From positions 318,844 to 382,843 of the forward strand of contig NW_005434665.1 in assembly GCF_000315625.1 (NCBI RefSeq): a stretch of DNA of 64,000 nucleotides, in the 5' to 3' direction. Of this stretch, positions 5,060 through 42,399 are shown piece by piece (positions within the stretch are counted from its first letter, which is position 1; every line of letters starts with the position of its first letter). Both the position numbers and the translations under genes were made by a program. The notes beneath the pieces were generated by a model that searched no databases, was not told where the DNA came from, and worked only from the letters and a program-made list of their open reading frames with translations. Source of the DNA: Guillardia theta CCMP2712 (taxonomy: Eukaryota; Protista; Cryptophyta).

Positions 5060-8000
5060 ATGTTCGAGAAGACGCTTTCGGATCTTGTGAAGGGTCTTAG
5101 ATCCAACAAGCGACGTGAAGCAGAGTATGTATCCAAATGTATTGCAGAGATCAAGGAAGAGCTTCAAAGCAAAGACAAGAGTCATACTGTCAAGGCCAAC
5201 GCGGTGGTAAAGCTGGCTTATTTGCAAATGCTCGGATATGATATGCAATGGGCTTCCTTTCACATTGTCGAAGTGATGTCATCTCCTGGTTTTGCTCAAA
5301 AGCGTTTAGGATATCTTGGTGCTTCCGTATCCTTTAATGATGAAACAGAAGTGGTGTTACTCTGCACAAACATGTTCAAGAAGGACTTCCAAGATGCTAG
5401 CCCATTCGTAGTTGGCCTTGCCATCAATTGCTTGGCCAATATCTGCACCACAGATCTTGCGCGAGACCTGGTTGCTGATGTTGTGCAGCTCATGAACAGC
5501 AACAGGGCTTATGTTAGGAAGAAGGCAGTTCTGGTCATGTACAAGATTTTTCTAAAGTTCCCTGACGCTCTCCGACCTTCGTTCCCCAAACTCAAGGAGA
5601 AATTGGAAGACAGGGATACTTCGACGGTATCATGCGCTGTCAACGTGATTTGCGAGTTGGCCAGGAAAAACCCTCAGAATTATCTTGCGCTAGCTCCCAT
5701 CTTCTTCAAACTACTCACGCACACAGCGAACAATTGGATGCTAATCAAAATCGTCAAACTTCTAGGAGCACTATGTCCTCTGGAACCACGCTTAGGCAAG
5801 AAATTGGTCGAACCTCTTACCAATTTGATTAATACCACACCTGCAAAATCGCTTCTTTATGAGGCAATCCATACAGTGTCAGTTGGTATGACCCCTCATT
5901 TGGAAATTGTTCAGCTTTCGATGGAAAAGTTGAAGGATTTTGTTGAGGATGAAGATCAAAATCTGAAATATCTTGGCTTGTTGGCTATGGGAAATTTCAT
6001 GAAGGTCCATCCAAGGATTGTAGCTGAGCACAAAACAATGATTCTCAAATGTTTGAATGATGAAGATATCACGATTCGCCATCGCGCCCTTGATTTGGTT
6101 TCAGGGATGGTTACCAAGAAGAATCTACAAGATATTGTTCGTATTCTTATGGAGCACGTTGACAACTCTGAGGGAAGTTTTCGGCATGATCTCGTCGACA
6201 AGATAATCGAGGTGTCGTCAGCAAATGGATACGCTGCGGTTACCAACTTCGAATGGTACATCACGACTTTGTGCAAGCTCGCCAGAGTTCCGGGTGTTTG
6301 TAACGGTCTGAATTTGAAGAACCAGCTGATGGACGTCATCATTCGTGTCAGAGCTGTTCGTGAATTTGGAGTTGCGGCTATGGTTGACATTCTCCGCGAC
6401 ATTGACATGTTGTCTCAGTGCAGCAGGGATCCTACCTCAGCTGAGGTGATGTATGCTGCTGCCTGGTTGGTAGGAGAGTTCTCTGACCTGCTCGAGGACT
6501 CAAAGAGAGCTGGAGTTATGGATTCTCTTCTCTCCAAGAGGGTGATGTGTCTCCCAGAACATGTACAAAGTGTGTACCTGCACAGTGCTTTGAAGATTTA
6601 CGTCAGTGCTTCCAAAGGCTTCTCACCAACAGGAAATCTCCTAGAGGATGAAAGCATCTCGAATCACACTGGAGATCTCCTCTCCCAAGCTGAGACTGCC
6701 TCATCCCAACTGGGGGAAGCGGCTGCAAACCCGCAGAATGACTTGGACCTTCTCCTAGGCTCTGATCTTCCTCCGATGCAACAAGCACCTCAAGTCGCTG
6801 AAGCTGCCGCAGTCCCTTCAGGTGCCGTACAAGCGAGGCCAGCGAATGTCCCCTCTGCTCAGCTATACAACATCTTGGACGAACGGCTTCCGGCTTTTGA
6901 GAAGAGCACGCTGCTGGAGGTGCAAGAGCGAGCCTGTATCTGTCATCACCTTTTGGAACTTGTAAAGGAAGCAGAATCTCTTGGATCCGAGACCATTCTT
7001 CAAAGCCAGTTCGAGTCGATGTTTCTGGACGAGCTGAAGCCCGTGGCACCCAAAGCTCAGTCAAAAGTGCCAGTTCCTGAAGGCCTTGACCTTGATGCAA
7101 GAATCCATGACGTTGAACTAGAGGATGAGCCAACAGAAGATGAAAGTGAGCACTCAGCAAATGAGCAAGATGAGGACAGCGATGGCGAGAAGAAGAAGAA
7201 GAAGAAGAAGGAAAAAAGTTCAGGATGGAGTGAAAATGACTTCATGGGCTCAGACAAGTTTGCAATTAAACCATCCAAGAAGGAACTGAAGAAGATGCAG
7301 AAACAAGCTGAGAAGGAACGCAAGAAGAGAATCACGGATCCGTTCTATCTTGGTGCCAAGACCGCATCAGAGGAGCAAGCTGTCTTGCTTGATGCTCAGG
7401 AAGTGGAGGCTATTCCGATCTTCCATCTCAGTGATGATGAAGAGGGGGGCAAGAAGAAGAAGCGAAAAAGCAAGAAGAAGAAGAATGACAGTGACGAGGA
7501 TGACGGGCAGGACGAGCCGTCAACTCCGAACTCTTCGAATGCTCCTCTTGTACACATGGGATACGAAATGCCTGACGCGGATGGCGATGACGAGGATGCC
7601 AACGAAGACGCAGGAGCATCGCGAGATGAACTTGCTGCCAAGCTTAATGTGGACTTGTCGAAGCCCCTGAAGGCATCTGAGGTCCTTCCTACCATCAAAC
7701 AATATGAACGCAAGTCGCGATATGAAATTGAAGAGGAAGAGAGGAAGAAGAAGAAGAAGGAGAAGAAGGAGAAGGAGAAAATGAAGAAGGAGAAGAAGGA
7801 CAAGAAGAGCAAGGAACACGAAGATGATACGAATTCAAAAGATGATCTGTTGGATTTTGAAAAGCTCTCAGAGGACAACAAGGATTCAGAGCAAAAGGAT
7901 GACTTGTTAGATGAAATTTCATCTTCCAAGCCGTCAGCGCCAGTACAGAATCGATCGGCCTTGGTTGCCTCTGACGACCTTGATCTCCTTTTTGAGACAA

Positions 8001-9629: not shown

Positions 9630-11370
9630 CAGAGGAGTCGTAGAACATCCAGGAATGAAGAGAGAGTTAAGTACGCGACTGCTGATTTAGAGTCACTCCT
9701 GCAGGTCCAACGCCTTGCGGTCGAACGTCTGATGGCTGATGCTCTTTCCGACAAATCTCGCCATTTTGCTCGCTGACTAGGTTGATACGCCCATGGCAGA
9801 CGTCGTCGAGGACGACAAGGATGGTAGCTCTATGATACTCATTTCGCTCCTTTCATGTAGCTCGTCCGCAGACTCCTCCTCCTCGTCCTCCTCCGACTGC
9901 TGGGAATGCACAACATGCCTTAAGAGCATTCCTGGAATCATCTGGCAGGTAGCCTGAACCTCCTTGCGCGGAACTTTCGATCGACATGTTTTTCTGTTTC
10001 CCAGTGCCGTAGCGGCCACCTGCTTTGCGGCGACTGCCATGTTCTTGCCAAGAACCACTGCCCCACATGCTCAGTAGAGCTGGAGGGCATCAGAAATCGC
10101 GCTGTCGAGCGAATACGAGAGCGAAGGATACTGAAGAAGGAGCGGAAGGTGAAGTTCTGGGTTGCGCTACCTCCCTCATTGTGCGTTAGAAAGGGAAGCC
10201 TGCGGCTGAAAGCGAGCAGAGCAAGAAGCAGCGGGTCCACAATAAGGGCGGAAGATCGCAGTATGCTACATCTGTGCTCTTTGAACTTGTCTTGAGCGCT
10301 GTCAGCCACAGGAACGAGCAGGCGAGCGCTGAGAGCGCAAGGCCGCCCAACCCGATCCCCGAGGTTCTCCTGCTGATGTCTATTTGCAAACTTGTGGTGA
10401 AGAACTTTTGTAGATTGTTCGGAAAAATTCGCTGGTTGTCATCAGCGCGTGTGTGGCATTGGTAGCTGTCTTGCTGTTCCCGGTATCTGGTGTTGTTGGT
10501 ATCTTGCAATGCAGCTGACACAGTACCAGTACGCAAGAACGGGGCTCGGGACTCTCAGGGAGGGAGCAAAATCTTCGTGGACGAGCTTGTTTGCAGGAAT
10601 ATCCTCCTAGAGACGAGCTCCCGCAGCTGACAACCTTGATACAGGGCCATCAAGAGCTGCAGAGGGTGCGGTGTTGATCAATCATACCAATGGGACCAAC
10701 ACCACAAAGAACATCAGCGACGGTGAGAGAGGAGATGAGAATTCTACAGCCAGCAGCAACACGAGCATCGACTCGTCTCCCACAAACAGCACGCAGAGTC
10801 ACCAAGAAGGGTGTGTCTTATCTTGTCTCTGATTTCAATGACAAACATTCAACTTCCCCCTCAGTTCCAACCAGACTCTGCTATCTAAACCTATCCCTCG
10901 CTGGGCCGAACTTCCTGTCCCACGTCCCTTGCGATTGTGCTCTTTCAAGAGGGATGAAGTGGTGAGCTGAACCCTCGAGATTTTGACGCTGCCAGCTCAT
11001 CCTGTGCCTCTTGCGCCTTGGCTGACTTTCCCTTAAGGTTGACCTTGACTGGACTTGGGTTGTCATGGCAGACGCCATGGGTTGGGCCCACCAGGTGAAG
11101 AGTTTTGGCACTCGGCCGTGACTGAGATGAATCCGGCAGGGCCCCCTCATGAATGTCGATCGTCCTTCGAGTGATTATGGGGTGTGGGTTTGCATCTGCC
11201 CTGAAGCGATGTGAGCGAGGGGATGGAAATGGTTCTCAGTGTGCTAACTCGTTTGTTCTCCTCTCCCCCTTACGTCAGAGTCCGTCAACCCTGCGTCAAG
11301 TATATTAGTTCAGGAGATCCGGATTATGCCTGCATGAGGGTAAGGAGCCGTGATGTTTCGCGGCTGCCAG
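9630..11370 (+). CDS. Multi-exon gene with SINA/Siah-type RING finger (putative E3 ligase); both ends uncertain
   Basis: Removing intron 9949-10004 gives WECTTCLKSIPGIIWQ-CRSGHLLCGDCHVLAKNHCPTCSVELEGIRNRAVERI, the Sina RING pattern including the RN-x-A-x-E tail. Further short GT-AG-bounded exons follow. The 5' part may lie in the gap. Confidence 0.65.
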
Positions 11371-39400: not shown

Positions 39401-40350
39401 TTCTGTACTGTACAGATGCAACTTGGAATAGCTGATGAAATTTCTTTGTGTGCTGAATCTTCGGTTGCTGGCGATTTGACAAGATGTGAGAGCGGCATCA
39501 GTCCAACATTGGATGCTTATGCAAGTGGTCAGTACTGTTTGGGGTTCATCTGTAGTTTGCTTAACAACCTGCCTGGAACAGATTCTGGGATGGAGATGAA
39601 GATTCCACCGTGGCCGCAAGATTTGATATCAGCAATGAATGCATTGGCTCGAATATTTGTTGGCGGGCGGCAGATAGTTTGCACTCGAGCAGAATTTGGG
39701 ATGCAGGTAAAGTTGTTTTGTGTCAAACTGGATTAGATGTGATATGTACGGTAGGTGCATCCTCAATTCAGCAATATGATCATCAAGGGAAAGATTGTTC
39801 GCACACAACCATGGCTTGCAAATGGGGCTCTTGAGAATGTTGATGAAATCAAGGGATGCATCGCGATAATTGGACGAGGCGGCTGTCCCTTTACGGAGAA
39901 AGCAAGGCGTGCAGAGGAAGCTGGTGCAAAGGCTGTTGTCATAGTCAACCATGCAGATTTCTTGTTCAACGTCTTGGGAAAGGTACGGTCGCGATGGCAA
40001 TGCCATGTGGAATGTACTTATGTTTTTGATTTTCAAGGTTTCCAATATCAATATCCCAGTCGTCTCCATCACTAAGAGCGATGGCGACTCGTTACAGAAT
40101 GGAATGTCTGCTGTCTTACAATGGGGTGAAAACCCGAAGAAGGCACTTGAAGACTCGAAGAACATGGAAGTGAAGGAGCTTGCCGAGAAGGAGGAGTTCC
40201 CCTACAGTTTCAGATTAACCTCCCAGGTGATAATCGCTTACTCTCAACCTCCCAACACCGGATTTTGACATACTGATGATGCAGCTAGTGGAAGCGAAAG
40301 ACATGGTTACAGAAAGAAGATCAGAATATGTCAATCTGACCGTCATCTAA
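36453..40350 (+). CDS. Multi-exon multidomain protein: PDZ - coiled coil - PA - WW - PA
   Basis: PDZ DFVGIGIAL...VWPGSPAEIAGIRRND; PA1 CIIIIDQRSENFASHARRAILAGATSIVII; WW LPLGWSMRMSRSRNQVFYYNKETREKRWTVP; PA2 IKGCIAIIGRGGCPFTEKARRAEEAGAKAVVIVN...IPVVSI. Could be two adjacent genes. Confidence 0.7.
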
Positions 40351-40428
40351 CAAGTTCATCTTTATTTACTTGGATAAACTTAGTGTACACTTTGCTCTTG
40401 TTGAGTATCCTCGTGTGAAAAGGAGAAT

Positions 40429-42091
40429 TTACTGTGCAAACACATCGATTCTCTTGTCGGGAAAGGTGTAAACATCAATCTGCGATGTTCATCATATCAG
40501 AGAAGCATGAGCAGCTGTATCACAAACACACCTTATCCATGAGAGGTCCTGGGAAGTCACTTCGTGGACCTGCCACCATGTTCTCAGCTGCTCGGGCAGC
40601 AGTGGCTTCAGCACGTACCCATCACACTCGCGTCTGTAGACACAGGGTATTCGCAGCCGTCGTGCTTCACCATGTACATTCCAGCCTGCAGAACGGGTGA
40701 CTTGAGCATGGGGGCGAGGAAGCAGAGGGTTACCCGATCTCCTCCGTATCGATCGATCCCCAGCTCCTTGGCCTTGTCAAACATCTGCTGCAGCGTCAGG
40801 GACAAGCGAGACTAGTTTCTCAAGCCCACCTCATCAAGCTCGGCTTTGCTGACTTTGGGGCCCCTGGAGGGTTGGGGGGTCAGGCGAGGCTCGACGGTTC
40901 ATGGCGTACCTTGCAAGGAAGTTGATACCCACGAAGAGAATCTTTCCCGCAGCCTCCACGCACTGCAGAGATTTCAGATCATGATTGGACATCTCCTCAG
41001 CTTGTCTACTTGACCTGCATCTGCAACGATCTGTCGTAGTAGGTCTTCCCATTTGCAGTCTTCTTCCACACGTAGAGCACGTAGTTGGGAAAATTGTAAG
41101 CGAAGCTGAAGGAAGGTCAGGGAGCGTTTCCTTGTGTGAGTGAACGAGTCTCACCCTTTCTCAAGAAACTCTCCAGGCTTCGACTTGTCATACTGGATAG
41201 TCATGTTGAGAGTATAGATCTTCTTGGCCACGTCCTCGCCTGCTCAGACCTTCACTGACTCCCCAGCAGCAGGAGAGAGTCGCAACCTGGAAGCACTCCA
41301 GTCATCGGGCACGTTGTAGTGAACATGTCCTCGATCATGTTGTTGCTGCGAATGGTGAAATTGAATCGTGTGCATCCACCTGGCAAGCGACGAGGTCAAC
41401 GCGATCGGGGGAGGGCAGGGCTCGTACAGAAGTAGTTGGCTTGAGTGACGTCGTGATATGCAAGCTCATACCAGATCCCCTGATACAAGTCTTCCTGCCA
41501 TGCTCGAGCTCAAAAGATCGGAAGAGAAACCTTGTGTCACACCGTGAAATCGCTAGGACGAGACTTCTTGCTGATCTCCTTGAGGTTCGGACACTTGTCC
41601 GCTGCGGCGGCAGGCTCGTCAGCGTACGCTCGCTGTGGGCATTAAAGTCACAGGGGGGCAAATCTGAGAGAGAGAGTTCGAACCGGTTGAGGAGCAAAGC
41701 AAAGAGACGGCGCCAAGAGCGCTGAGGCTGAGAACACCTTCTTGGCAATGTGAAGGAACACGTCTCGCCTTGCGATCTCCTGCTTGACGGCAGAGATCGT
41801 CTGAGCCTGCATCCTCTCTCAACACGCCCAACAGCAACGGCAGCTCATGATCACCAGCGCCTCCACTCCTCTGATCGCCTTGGTCAACCTCGTGCCCGAA
41901 GCTGGCGAGTGCCCTACATGTCGTTTGGGAACAGGGATGCTCACGAATGGAGGAGGTTGATTACAGCTCCCTTCCCGCACTTCATGACCCGGCTGCGCCG
42001 GTACTAAGAAGTGTCGGAAGGAGGAAGCCGTCTGCATCATGCAGACGCAAAGCAAGAGGCTGAGCACTGGCCGAAGACTCATCTGCATCAT
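40429..42091 (-). CDS. Lipocalin-family protein with tripartite targeting to the thylakoid lumen
   Basis: Signal peptide ending TASS-F; twin-Arg IARRDVF plus hydrophobic FSASALLAPSLCFA and A-Y-A cleavage site; lipocalin SCR1 DLYQGIWYELAY; later CGCTRFNF, YVLYV, FVGINFLAR, MFDKAKELGI, MVKHDGC. Confidence 0.75.
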
Positions 42092-42153
42092 CAAGATCAC
42101 AAGATGAAAGTTGAGGAAGACTTTATGGGGTCGCCGTCACCGGTTCTTGCTCT

Positions 42154-42303
42154 TTCACCCTAAGATCAGACTAGAGATCTAGCTTCACCCTCAGATCAGA
42201 CTAGAGGTCCAGCTTCACGCTCAGATCAGACTAGAGGTCCAGCTTCACGCTCAGATCAGACTAGAGATCTAGCTTCACGCTCAGATCAGACTAGAGATCT
42301 AGC
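42154..42303 (+). repeat. 30-bp minisatellite x5 (TTCAC(C/G)CTCAGATCAGACTAGAG(A/G)TC(T/C)AGC)
   Basis: Five head-to-tail units with no spacers, ~60 bp upstream of the lipocalin ATG. Confidence 0.95.
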
Positions 42304-42399
42304 TACTTTCCTCAACTCTATCCCCCTTTTGCCCTTGTGCTTCAGTCGCGTCAGGGTCTGCAAACGCTTTCCTCCTCTTCCCCTCCACATGGAGGCCGA

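What the first reader, a model, noticed from the sequence alone, without database searches (positions are those of the whole stretch)
40429..42091. Tat-targeted thylakoid-lumen lipocalin in a probable cryptophyte
Seen: signal peptide + Phe, transit-like region, RR motif, hydrophobic stretch, AYA cleavage site, then a Cys-containing lipocalin (GIWYELA). Established: lumenal lipocalins include violaxanthin de-epoxidase and plant LCNP/CHL (qH quenching); cryptophytes keep their phycobiliprotein antenna in the lumen and lack a classical xanthophyll cycle; several lipocalins bind bilins. I do not see the Cys-rich N-terminal or Glu-rich C-terminal domains of VDE. Inference: a candidate lumenal bilin/pigment carrier or photoprotection factor.
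Basis: partly seen in the sequence, partly recalled or inferred. Interest (0 to 1): 0.7.

Follow-up and report, generated by a model that had tools for sequence, protein, structure and literature searches.

The report
Thylakoid-lumen lipocalin of a cryptophyte alga
A real, expressed Guillardia theta gene encodes a small ligand-binding barrel protein (a lipocalin) whose three-part address label should send it into the thylakoid lumen; it belongs to an unnamed family shared with brown and yellow-green algae, which argues against the proposed role in the cryptophyte bilin antenna.

Summary
On the minus strand, 42091..40429, lies a 13-exon gene with 12 GT-AG introns of 45-52 nt. All the junctions appear in spliced RNA contigs. 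It is GUITHDRAFT_133874 of Guillardia theta CCMP2712 and is single-copy.

The RNA-supported 359-aa product has:
- a signal peptide cut before Phe (TASS|F);
- a transit-like stretch;
- a lumen-targeting domain: RR, then a 16-aa hydrophobic core, then PRAYA|DEP;
- a 235-aa mature protein with six Cys.

The public gene model removes the hydrophobic core and mis-ends the protein, so the Tat signal cannot be seen in databases.

The mature part folds as a canonical lipocalin (VIA-align Z about 16 to Blc, ApoD, sandercyanin and TIL; 15.2 to VDE). It does not reach any Pfam threshold. It lacks the VDE domains and LCNP's Met-rich ends.

It belongs to an unnamed family of at least 131 proteins. A strongly supported plastid-type clade joins cryptophytes with brown, yellow-green and related algae. 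Most full-length members of that clade carry RR-type lumen signals. Other marine eukaryotes and Lingula have plain secreted versions.

Orthologues in algae without phycobilins weaken the bilin-carrier idea. An LCNP-like role in handling lipids or pigments is more likely but untested. The scan holds only this same stretch, with no earlier report on other DNA.

The parts
40429..42091 (-). Whole coding region: 13 exons, 12 GT-AG introns of 45-52 nt, 359-aa product (GUITHDRAFT_133874, model corrected). Exons: 41855-42091, 41684-41806, 41543-41632, 41428-41494, 41287-41379, 41155-41239, 41015-41105, 40910-40962, 40830-40863, 40734-40784, 40619-40685, 40532-40569, 40429-40479.
   Evidence: Spliced RNA contigs. 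Splice-site adjustment and translation. Identity to P0001.
42020..42082 (-). ER-type signal peptide MSLRPVLSLLLCVCMMQTASS. Hydrophobic core mean Kyte-Doolittle 1.93. Predicted cut ASS|F.
   Evidence: Relatives have ADA|F, GDA|F, AAG|F and AEA|F at the same place. The AXA-F rule for G. theta comes from PMC5784005.
42017..42019 (-). Phe25 codon at +1 of the predicted signal-peptide cut, the mark of import into the complex plastid.
   Evidence: Sequence. Conserved in P0003, P0005, P0006 and P0010.
41855..42016 (-). Transit-peptide-like region (rest of exon 1): net basic, Pro-rich, poorly conserved.
41684..41806 (-). Exon 2, a phase 0-0 exon of 41 codons. It encodes the n- and h-regions of the lumen-targeting domain (AQTISAVKQEIARRDVFLHIAKKVFSASALLAPSLCFAPQP).
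   Evidence: X1 record 2 covers it without a break, and X4 loose ends confirm both junctions. Translation.
41765..41770 (-). Twin-arginine codons (Arg92-Arg93).
   Evidence: Sequence. RR is invariant in 5 of 5 cryptophyte sequences and present in P0016-P0019 and P0024.
41690..41737 (-). Hydrophobic core of the lumen signal (VFSASALLAPSLCFAP). The public gene model removes it as part of an intron.
   Evidence: P0001 lacks it and the RNA contig contains it. The equivalent cores in P0003-P0006 are hydrophobic but diverged.
41621..41629 (-). AYA, the predicted thylakoidal processing site. It is preceded by Arg121 in the c-region.
   Evidence: PRAYA is conserved in P0003-P0005, and P0006 has PRAAFG.
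40619..41620 (-). Exons 3-11: mature lipocalin domain. It holds the N-terminal Cys-Pro, GIWYELAYHD, CGC, TTTCP, MQCVE, FVGINFLAR, the C-terminal helix and HDGCEYP.
   Evidence: AF2 model with 8 strands and a helix. Foldseek and VIA matches to lipocalins. Family alignment.
41459..41479 (-). GIWYELA, the first lipocalin signature (GxW).
   Evidence: G, W, Y, E and A are invariant in A1. It aligns to the GTWYEIA / GRWYEI motif of Blc and ApoD.
40429..40479 (-). Exon 13: C-terminal tail IDVYTFPDKRIDVFAQ plus the stop codon. It is missing from the public model, which reads into intron 12.
   Evidence: X1 joint 40479|40532. P0003 has a homologous tail, VELYAYPDARVDSY.

Best explanation

Inferred route:
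1. The signal peptide takes the precursor into the ER and outermost plastid membrane.
2. Phe at +1 and the transit-like stretch carry it across the periplastid and envelope membranes into the stroma.
3. The exposed twin-arginine domain (RR, a moderately hydrophobic core, a basic c-region and AYA) engages the thylakoid Tat translocase.
4. The lumenal peptidase cuts after AYA.

The mature protein belongs to a previously unnamed lipocalin family that falls below every Pfam threshold. The plastid-type branch of that family is shared with brown, yellow-green and related ochrophyte algae.

Its most likely job is to bind a small hydrophobic or amphipathic molecule at the lumenal face of the thylakoid, such as a membrane lipid or lipid-oxidation product, a carotenoid or a tetrapyrrole. 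That would be a role analogous to plant LCNP, not a cryptophyte-specific bilin function.

Shown: the gene structure, expression, the fold, family membership and conservation of the signal. Inferred: the location, use of Tat, the disulfides and the ligand class.
For: - Gene and expression: spliced RNA contigs from two studies give all 12 junctions, including the RR and AYA exons. The ORF is continuous.
- Identity: the gene is GUITHDRAFT_133874 and is single-copy in the 87-Mb genome.
- Targeting in cryptophytes: SP + Phe, RR, hydrophobic core and PRAYA are conserved in 5 of 5 cryptophyte sequences while SP/TP and the core diverge.
- Targeting in ochrophytes: orthologues carry classical signals, TTRRSMIK, SSRRRALK, QSRRNLLK, STRRGLLG and VNRRGFLG, each followed by a hydrophobic stretch and AxA.
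- Precedent: the same tripartite design is documented for G. theta phycoerythrin alpha subunits (PMC5784005).
- Machinery: a TatA/B-family gene is present in the nuclear genome.
- Fold: AF2 pLDDT 72, pTM 0.77, eight strands and a C-terminal helix. Foldseek top hit ApoD, E 4e-8, TM 0.75. VIA Z 16.4 Blc, 16.3 sandercyanin, 16.1 ApoD, 15.9 TIL, 15.2 VDE. Atlas neighbours are ApoD-like.
- Distant sequence link: sub-threshold Lipocalin_2 hits recur in 6 of 6 plastid-type members scanned.
- Cysteines: six Cys are invariant across the family where the sequences are complete.
- Phylogeny: the plastid-type clade has 100% SH-aLRT support.
Against: - No experimental localisation, and no targeting predictor could be run on the joined model.
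- The RR is separated from the hydrophobic core by a charged 9-residue spacer (DVFLHIAKK), which is unusual for Tat signals.
- The Ectocarpales orthologues have RG(R/E) instead of RR.
- TatC was not found in the nuclear assembly. It is expected on the plastid genome, but that rests on my own knowledge.
- Transcript abundance is low: word depth about 5-7 against 57-1058 for the neighbouring gene, and almost no reads in the sampled 6% of run X13.
- The ligand and function are entirely inferred.
- Structure cannot tell lipocalin subfamilies apart, because all Z values lie within about 1.
Confidence: 0.65

Rival explanations
1. It is simply the cryptophyte (and ochrophyte) orthologue of plant LCNP/CHL, highly diverged, working in a qH-type sustained quenching pathway.
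For: Both are lumenal lipocalins. LCNP has seven conserved Cys with six in disulfides (bioRxiv 10.1101/2024.11.01.621559), and this protein has six invariant Cys. Weak Lipocalin_2 similarity recurs in the family. From memory only, LCNP also carries a CxC motif at the equivalent strand.
Against: Lipocalin_2 scores 14-18 bits against a cut-off of 24 in all six members scanned. No LCNP-named protein appears among the listed profile hits. The Met-rich N- and C-terminal stretches called a feature of LCNP proteins are absent: no Met between the cut site and the barrel, and two scattered Met in the tail. A direct alignment could not be made because no tool supplied an LCNP sequence.
Confidence: 0.12
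2. It is a bilin (PEB / 15,16-DHBV) carrier or chaperone serving the lumenal phycoerythrin PE545 antenna.
For: It shares the compartment with PE545. Some of the nearest structural neighbours bind biliverdin or heme (sandercyanin, BBP, TIL, nitrophorins). Tat export would allow a ligand loaded in the stroma to be carried across. The cryptophyte branch has a long stem of 1.04, so a change of function is possible.
Against: Orthologues with the same signature motifs and lumen signals occur in brown, xanthophyte, phaeothamniophyte and Chrysoparadoxa algae, which have no phycobiliproteins. The structural matches are equally good to lipocalins that bind fatty acids, steroids or carotenoids. PE545 is thought to be assembled with its bilins in the stroma before Tat export (PMC5784005).
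Confidence: 0.08
3. It is a lipocalin-type enzyme acting on a xanthophyll or lipid in the lumen, as VDE and VDL do, and not a passive carrier.
For: Many polar residues are invariant from cryptophytes to Lingula (H40, D41, T43, Q44, R53, N55, D66, N91, Q138, N152), more than a plain hydrophobic carrier would need. The VDE lipocalin domain is a close structural match (Z 15.2). The best feature-based atlas hit is a fungal lipocalin cluster named after a secondary-metabolite gene cluster protein, in which 17% of members carry PF07137.
Against: No PF07137 match. There is no Cys-rich or Glu-rich domain. The family also includes secreted animal and protist members with no obvious carotenoid context.
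Confidence: 0.1
4. The protein is not lumenal. It stops in the stroma, the periplastid space or the secretory pathway, and the RR/AYA segment is only a conserved N-terminal part of the mature protein.
For: There is a charged spacer after RR. The h-region hydrophobicity is only moderate (1.58). Localisation data are lacking. Relatives outside the plastid clade are ordinary secreted proteins.
Against: Phe at +1 is conserved. The hydrophobic core changes sequence but stays hydrophobic, and it is always followed by a small-x-small site just before the conserved Cys-Pro. Ochrophyte orthologues have textbook RR signals. Six conserved Cys fit an oxidising compartment better than the stroma.
Confidence: 0.05

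Closest known systems
LCNP / CHL, the plastid (thylakoid-lumen) lipocalin of plants
   Same: A soluble lipocalin in the thylakoid lumen. It is disulfide-rich: LCNP has six Cys in disulfides, and six Cys are invariant here. Size is similar: LCNP is listed at 28.4 kDa, and this protein is 26.7 kDa.
   Different: It does not reach the Lipocalin_2 threshold. It lacks the Met-rich N- and C-terminal stretches that SOQ1 acts on. It has six Cys, not seven. Orthology is untested. It is imported through five membranes, not three.
Apolipoprotein D / Blc / TIL / sandercyanin group of lipocalins
   Same: These are the best structural matches (Z 15.9-16.4). They share the N-terminal Cys-Pro, the GxWYE motif and the (A/S)R-P...helix segment. 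The profile aligns the second Cys of CGC to the ApoD strand-B Cys.
   Different: Sequence similarity is marginal (E 0.02-0.05 against PDB). This protein has an extra Cys pair (the first Cys of CGC and TTTCP), the invariant YHDxTQ loop and a tail of about 45 aa. The compartment differs.
Violaxanthin de-epoxidase family (VDE, VDL, VDR)
   Same: A lumenal lipocalin domain with a close fold (Z 15.2 to 3cqn).
   Different: No PF07137 match, no Cys-rich N-domain and no Glu-rich C-domain. A separate VDE-family gene lies at G000:C39.
Tripartite presequences of Guillardia theta phycoerythrin alpha subunits
   Same: Signal peptide with AXA|F, a transit peptide, then a lumen-targeting domain with RR, a hydrophobic core and AXA (PMC5784005).
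   Different: The passenger is a lipocalin, not an antenna subunit. The RR is followed by a charged spacer before the core.
GtCPES, the S-type phycobilin lyase with a modified lipocalin fold
   Same: A cryptophyte beta-barrel protein related to lipocalins that binds bilins (bioRxiv 10.1101/2020.03.31.018853).
   Different: No sequence relation was seen: no CpeS-family Pfam hit at E<=10. GtCPES has a 10-stranded barrel. The model here has 8 strands and the classical GxW, Arg and helix layout.

Membership tests
Lipocalin superfamily (calycins) | Eight-stranded antiparallel beta-barrel followed by a C-terminal alpha-helix | tested here: met
   AF2 model: strands at 32-39, 51-60, 63-72, 86-96, 103-107, 113-125, 128-142 and 145-155, helix at 162-174. 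451 PDB chains reach Z>=8, and all 50 listed are lipocalins.
Lipocalin superfamily (calycins) | Conserved sequence regions: GxW at strand A and a conserved Arg near the end of strand H | tested here: met
   G32, W34 and R156 are invariant in A1. The profile aligns them to the GTWYEIA and SRTP segments of Blc.
Pfam Lipocalin_2 (PF08212; Blc, ApoD, TIL and, from my knowledge, LCNP) | Score at or above the curated cut-off of 24 bits | tested here: not met
   14.8 bits for P0001. 14.2-17.7 bits for five other plastid-type members, and no hit in the secreted-type members.
LCNP / CHL | Met-rich N-terminal and C-terminal stretches (AtLCNP M121-M129 and M309-M315) | tested here: not met
   The mature protein here has no Met between Asp125 and the barrel and only two separated Met in the tail.
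LCNP / CHL | Seven conserved Cys, six of them in disulfides | tested here: inconclusive
   There are six Cys here, all invariant in complete family members. Their pairing is not determined, and positional equivalence to LCNP could not be tested.
LCNP / CHL | Groups with LCNP in a lipocalin phylogeny | not testable with these tools
   No tool returned an LCNP sequence.
VDE / VDL / VDR | PF07137 domain with a Cys-rich N-terminal domain (and a Glu-rich C-terminus in VDE) | tested here: not met
   No PF07137 hit at E<=10. Only one Cys lies before the barrel. Glu is 5.5% and the tail is not acidic.
Thylakoid Tat (delta-pH pathway) substrates | Twin arginine in the n-region, a moderately hydrophobic h-region, a c-region with a basic residue, and an AxA cut site | tested here: met
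   R92-R93. The 16-aa core has a mean Kyte-Doolittle of 1.58 against 1.93 for the ER signal. Arg121 lies in QPRAYA|D. The layout is conserved in orthologues.
Thylakoid Tat (delta-pH pathway) substrates | Transport that depends on the proton gradient and on the RR pair | not testable with these tools
   This needs in vitro thylakoid import or in vivo mutants.
Nucleus-encoded plastid proteins of cryptophytes | Signal peptide followed by a transit peptide beginning with Phe (or another aromatic residue) | tested here: met
   TASS|F25 here. P0003, P0005, P0006 and P0010 have ADA|F, GDA|F, AAG|F and AEA|F.

The most novel reading that the evidence does not exclude
The plastid-type branch of this unnamed lipocalin family is a lumenal factor specific to cryptophytes and the brown/yellow-green algal lineage. 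It would use its invariant polar pocket (His-Asp-x-Thr-Gln, Arg, Asn, Asp) to bind or chemically act on a thylakoid pigment or oxidised lipid. It may be loaded in the stroma and carried across in folded form by Tat. That would make it the functional counterpart in red-lineage algae of the LCNP or VDE type of photoprotective lipocalin, recruited independently from a secreted ancestor.
Probability: 0.2. Interest if true: 0.7.

Novelty: new variant of a known kind. Interest (0 to 1): 0.5.

Why it matters
Plants have two lumenal lipocalins, VDE and LCNP, and both are central to photoprotection. Nothing comparable has been described for cryptophytes, whose lumen also houses the phycobiliprotein antenna.

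This gene gives a concrete, single-copy candidate. It has orthologues in genetically tractable brown algae. It also defines a family of at least 131 proteins that no Pfam model covers.

The work shows that the public G. theta gene model hides the lumen signal, so proteome-wide predictions of lumen proteins based on that annotation would miss this protein.

The distribution (cryptophytes plus one ochrophyte lineage, with secreted relatives elsewhere) bears on how host secretory proteins were retargeted to complex plastids.

Tried and rejected
- Exon-by-exon Pfam scan of 8 exon translations by reference gave nothing meaningful. The exons are too short.
- A six-frame search of the genome with PF08212 gave no hit. 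This is uninformative because exons are about 30 codons long.
- phmmer of the public protein against PDB gave nothing at E<=10.
- A profile against PDB gave only marginal Blc and ApoD hits.
- Literature searches for the locus tag, for lipocalins in Guillardia or Ectocarpus, and for cryptophyte Tat substrates found no description of this protein.
- The supplements of the G. theta proteome paper are not held. The Malnoe 2018 LCNP paper is not held.
- No LCNP sequence could be obtained from any tool, so the comparison with LCNP rests on features quoted from papers, not on an alignment.
- Structure-based ranking could not separate the ApoD, Blc, TIL and VDE subfamilies, because all Z values lie within about 1.
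It was built only inside scripts from window coordinates. The public protein P0001 (residues 102-324, identical to model residues 121-343) stood in for it.
- For the same reason, SignalP, ASAFind and TatP-type predictions on the joined model were left out.
- The idea that the gene is GtCPES or another bilin lyase was rejected. The motifs differ, there is no CpeS hit, and this is an 8-stranded classical lipocalin.
Full report
**Gene structure and expression**

The region 40429-42091 carries a gene on the minus strand.

Public RNA data settle the structure. A 1048-nt contig of run X1 and several contigs of run X4 lie on the stretch. They show 12 joints whose skipped parts all begin CT and end AC on the plus strand, which is GT..AG on the minus strand, and are 45-52 nt long. 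The DNA run X9 is collinear with the window. After shifting each joint to its GT-AG position, the 13 exons give one open frame of 359 codons, from ATG 42091 to the stop at 40431-40429.

Both RNA contigs stop aligning at 42084, and the sequence cag|ATG sits there. The real start may therefore be the third ATG (42082, MSLRP...). This does not change the protein's features.

Transcript abundance is low. Word depth is about 5-7, against 57 (X1) and 1058 (X4) for the convergent neighbour. Almost no reads fell on the gene in the sampled 6% of the raw-read run X13.

**Identity and the annotation error**

Pfam found nothing in eight exon translations.

Exon 1 (79 aa), sent to the exhaustive representative search, recovered two proteins. 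One is P0001 (327 aa, 100% identical), later named as hypothetical protein GUITHDRAFT_133874 of Guillardia theta CCMP2712. The other is a mis-predicted relative, P0002. The assembly has 87.1 Mb in 669 contigs, and the window is C9:318844-382843.

P0001 differs from the RNA-supported model in two places:
- It uses a donor at 41737 instead of 41683. This deletes VFSASALLAPSLCFAPQP, the hydrophobic core of the lumen signal.
- It reads into intron 12 and ends ...MDKVCL, instead of splicing to exon 13 (IDVYTFPDKRIDVFAQ).

X1 covers 41684-41805 without a break, and the X4 loose ends join 41632 to 41684 and 41805 to 41854. The long form of exon 2 is therefore the expressed one in both data sets. A complete transcript from a related cryptophyte (P0003) has both the core and a homologous tail.

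P0001 residues 102-324 equal model residues 121-343 and were used for all database work. The joined 359-aa model itself was never sent to any search or fold tool.

**The presequence**

Residues 4-24 (MSLRPVLSLLLCVCMMQTASS) form a signal peptide with a core of mean hydropathy 1.93. The next residue is Phe25.

Residues 25-80 are net basic and Pro-rich. Residues 81-124 read QTISAVKQEIARRDVFLHIAKK-VFSASALLAPSLCFAP-QPRAYA, followed by DEP.

The second hydrophobic stretch is less hydrophobic (1.58) than the ER signal, and the c-region holds an Arg. From general knowledge of Tat signals, both are typical of them.

Exon 2 is a phase 0-0 exon that encodes just the n- and h-regions of this domain. Exon 1 holds the signal and transit parts, and exon 3 begins RAYA|DEP.

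The design matches what is documented for G. theta phycoerythrin alpha subunits: AXA|F, a transit peptide, RR, a hydrophobic domain and AXA (PMC5784005).

Conservation is the strongest argument that this is not chance. Four other cryptophyte sequences keep (S/N/A)RRD(V/M)F, a basic spacer, a hydrophobic core of different sequence, and PRAYA (PRAAFG in one). The distance from RR to the GxW motif is 64 residues in all five.

Ochrophyte orthologues carry textbook signals in front of the same mature N-terminus:
- TTRRSMIKNVGRGVVTATAAM..PALA
- SSRRRALKRIGQGTMAATGAA..PALA
- QSRRNLLKSLGTGLTSILAV..ANA
- STRRGLLGGLALGGGMLV..SPA
- VNRRGFLGLAFGAGAAL..AEA

The Ectocarpales have RG(R/E)FL instead of RR.

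A TatA/B-family exon exists in the nuclear genome. TatC was not found there. From my own knowledge it is plastid-encoded in cryptophytes.

Two unchecked notes from the scan report other G. theta proteins with similar tripartite Tat leaders.

**The mature protein**

It has 235 aa, 26.7 kDa, pI 5.4, six Cys and 5.5% Glu.

- Pfam gives only Lipocalin_2 at 14.8 bits, against a cut-off of 24.
- PDB sequences give nothing with the single protein.
- A family profile gives only marginal hits to Blc and ApoD (E 0.02-0.05). That alignment places GxWYE, the second Cys of CGC and the (A/S)R-P-helix segment on their lipocalin counterparts.
- An AlphaFold model built on a 10-sequence alignment (pLDDT 72, pTM 0.77) has eight strands and a C-terminal helix.
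- Foldseek ranks ApoD first (E 4e-8, target TM 0.75), followed by sandercyanin, crustacyanin, Blc and bilin-binding protein.
- VIA-align gives Z 16.4 (Blc), 16.3 (sandercyanin), 16.1 (ApoD), 15.9 (heme-bound TIL) and 15.2 (VDE lipocalin domain). These are ties, so the fold is a canonical lipocalin but does not pick a subfamily.
- Atlas searches agree.

**The family**

The word search and then a profile search found at least 131 relatives, none with a precomputed Pfam domain apart from one fusion artefact. Invariant features are:
- Cys-Pro before the barrel;
- G-x-W-Y-E-x-A-Y-H-D-x-T-Q;
- C-x-C-x-R-x-N;
- a fourth Cys about 23 residues on;
- Q-C-V;
- F-x-G-I-N-F-x-x-R;
- a last Cys in H-x-x-C-x-Y-P.

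A maximum-likelihood tree of 73 domain sequences was built with the quick method and SH-aLRT support. Forty-seven fragments lacking both anchor motifs were left out. It splits the family into two parts:
- A plastid-type clade of 16 rows with 100% support and a stem of 1.51. It holds 5 cryptophyte rows, themselves monophyletic at 100%, and 11 ochrophyte rows. The named ones are Vaucheria, Tribonema, Ectocarpus, Pylaiella, Discosporangium, Phaeothamnion and Chrysoparadoxa.
- A group of 57 proteins of about 200 aa with plain signal peptides, from Lingula, Triparma, a diatom, a dinoflagellate and many unlabelled marine eukaryotes.

One of the unlabelled proteins sits in an intronless tandem array on a 581-kb contig.

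Sub-threshold Lipocalin_2 hits (14-18 bits) recur in all six plastid-type members scanned and in none of the secreted ones. The G. theta genome holds only this one copy.

**Comparison with the known lumenal lipocalins**

VDE/VDL/VDR membership fails. There is no PF07137 hit, no Cys-rich N-domain and no Glu-rich tail. A separate PF07137 gene lies on contig 39.

For LCNP I could obtain no sequence from any tool, so I used features stated in a 2024 preprint. LCNP has seven conserved Cys, six of them in disulfides. Met-rich N- and C-terminal stretches are described as a feature of LCNP proteins and as the target of SOQ1. The protein here has six Cys and no Met-rich stretches, and it is below the Lipocalin_2 threshold.

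It is therefore not a plain LCNP orthologue. A distant relationship is not excluded. From memory only, LCNP also has a CxC motif on the equivalent strand. This remains the main open point.

**Function**

Structural similarity to biliverdin-binding lipocalins is no stronger than to fatty-acid, steroid, heme or carotenoid binders.

The many invariant polar residues suggest a specific, partly polar ligand, or even catalysis. The six conserved Cys fit an oxidising compartment.

My best reading is a lumenal ligand-binding lipocalin with an LCNP-like role in handling thylakoid lipids or pigments. The location is well supported by sequence and conservation. The function is inferred.

No paper in the held library mentions this gene or family.

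**Verdict**

This is a new variant of a known kind (lumenal lipocalins and tripartite Tat presequences), of moderate interest. A practical by-product is a corrected gene model.

Noticed in passing
window 42154-42304: Five tandem copies of a 30-bp unit (TTCACGCTCAGATCAGACTAGAGATCTAGC, 95% matches) lie just upstream of the lipocalin transcript's mapped 5' end. The unit occurs nowhere else in the 87-Mb genome. RNA run X1 has word depth 5.8 over 42175-42261 but none over 42088-42174, so a 5'-UTR exon inside the array is possible.
   Followed up: partly
window 42080-42091: RNA contigs from two studies both stop aligning at 42084 with 4 unaligned letters, and cag|ATG there looks like a splice acceptor. 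The true start codon may be ATG 42082 (MSLRP), not 42091.
   Followed up: no
window 41633-41737 and 40480-40531: The public gene model GUITHDRAFT_133874 (P0001) is wrong in two places. It uses an upstream donor that deletes the 18-aa hydrophobic core of the lumen signal, and it retains intron 12, which gives a false C-terminus (VCL).
   Followed up: yes
G000:C39:46876-48395 (L001-L003): A VDE-family (PF07137) gene exists in Guillardia theta. Exon hits score 38.1, 28.3 and 14.9 bits, and the tool gives 57.2 bits for the last hit together with its neighbours in the frame. Cryptophytes are usually said to lack a xanthophyll cycle. Whether it is VDE, VDL or VDR was not examined.
   Followed up: no
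G000:C97:46090-46203 (L009): A nuclear TatA/B-family exon scores 29.9 bits, above the cut-off. No TatC was found in the nuclear assembly.
   Followed up: partly
L010:2855-3451, 6001-6597, 9933-10517: Secreted-type relatives of the lipocalin form an intronless tandem array on a 581-kb ENA contig from an unidentified, apparently eukaryotic organism. Several carry N-x-T sequons (FNYTKCP, NLTKF).
   Followed up: partly
window 39755-40394 (+ strand): The convergent, highly expressed neighbour gene has one 58-nt intron (40224-40281) and is polyadenylated at about 40394. That is only about 35 nt from the lipocalin stop codon, so the two 3' ends nearly touch.
   Followed up: no
P0008, P0009, P0010 (Ectocarpales orthologues): In the lumen signal the twin arginine is replaced by RGR or RGE, while the FL-hydrophobic-AxA layout is kept. 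Other ochrophyte orthologues keep RR, and P0015 has a single Arg (NRVDFL). This may be a natural test case for RR dependence.
   Followed up: no
window 41684-41806: The lumen-targeting domain's n- and h-regions are encoded by a single symmetric (phase 0-0) exon lying between the transit-peptide exon and the exon that starts the mature protein. This is the layout expected if the targeting module was added as a unit.
   Followed up: no
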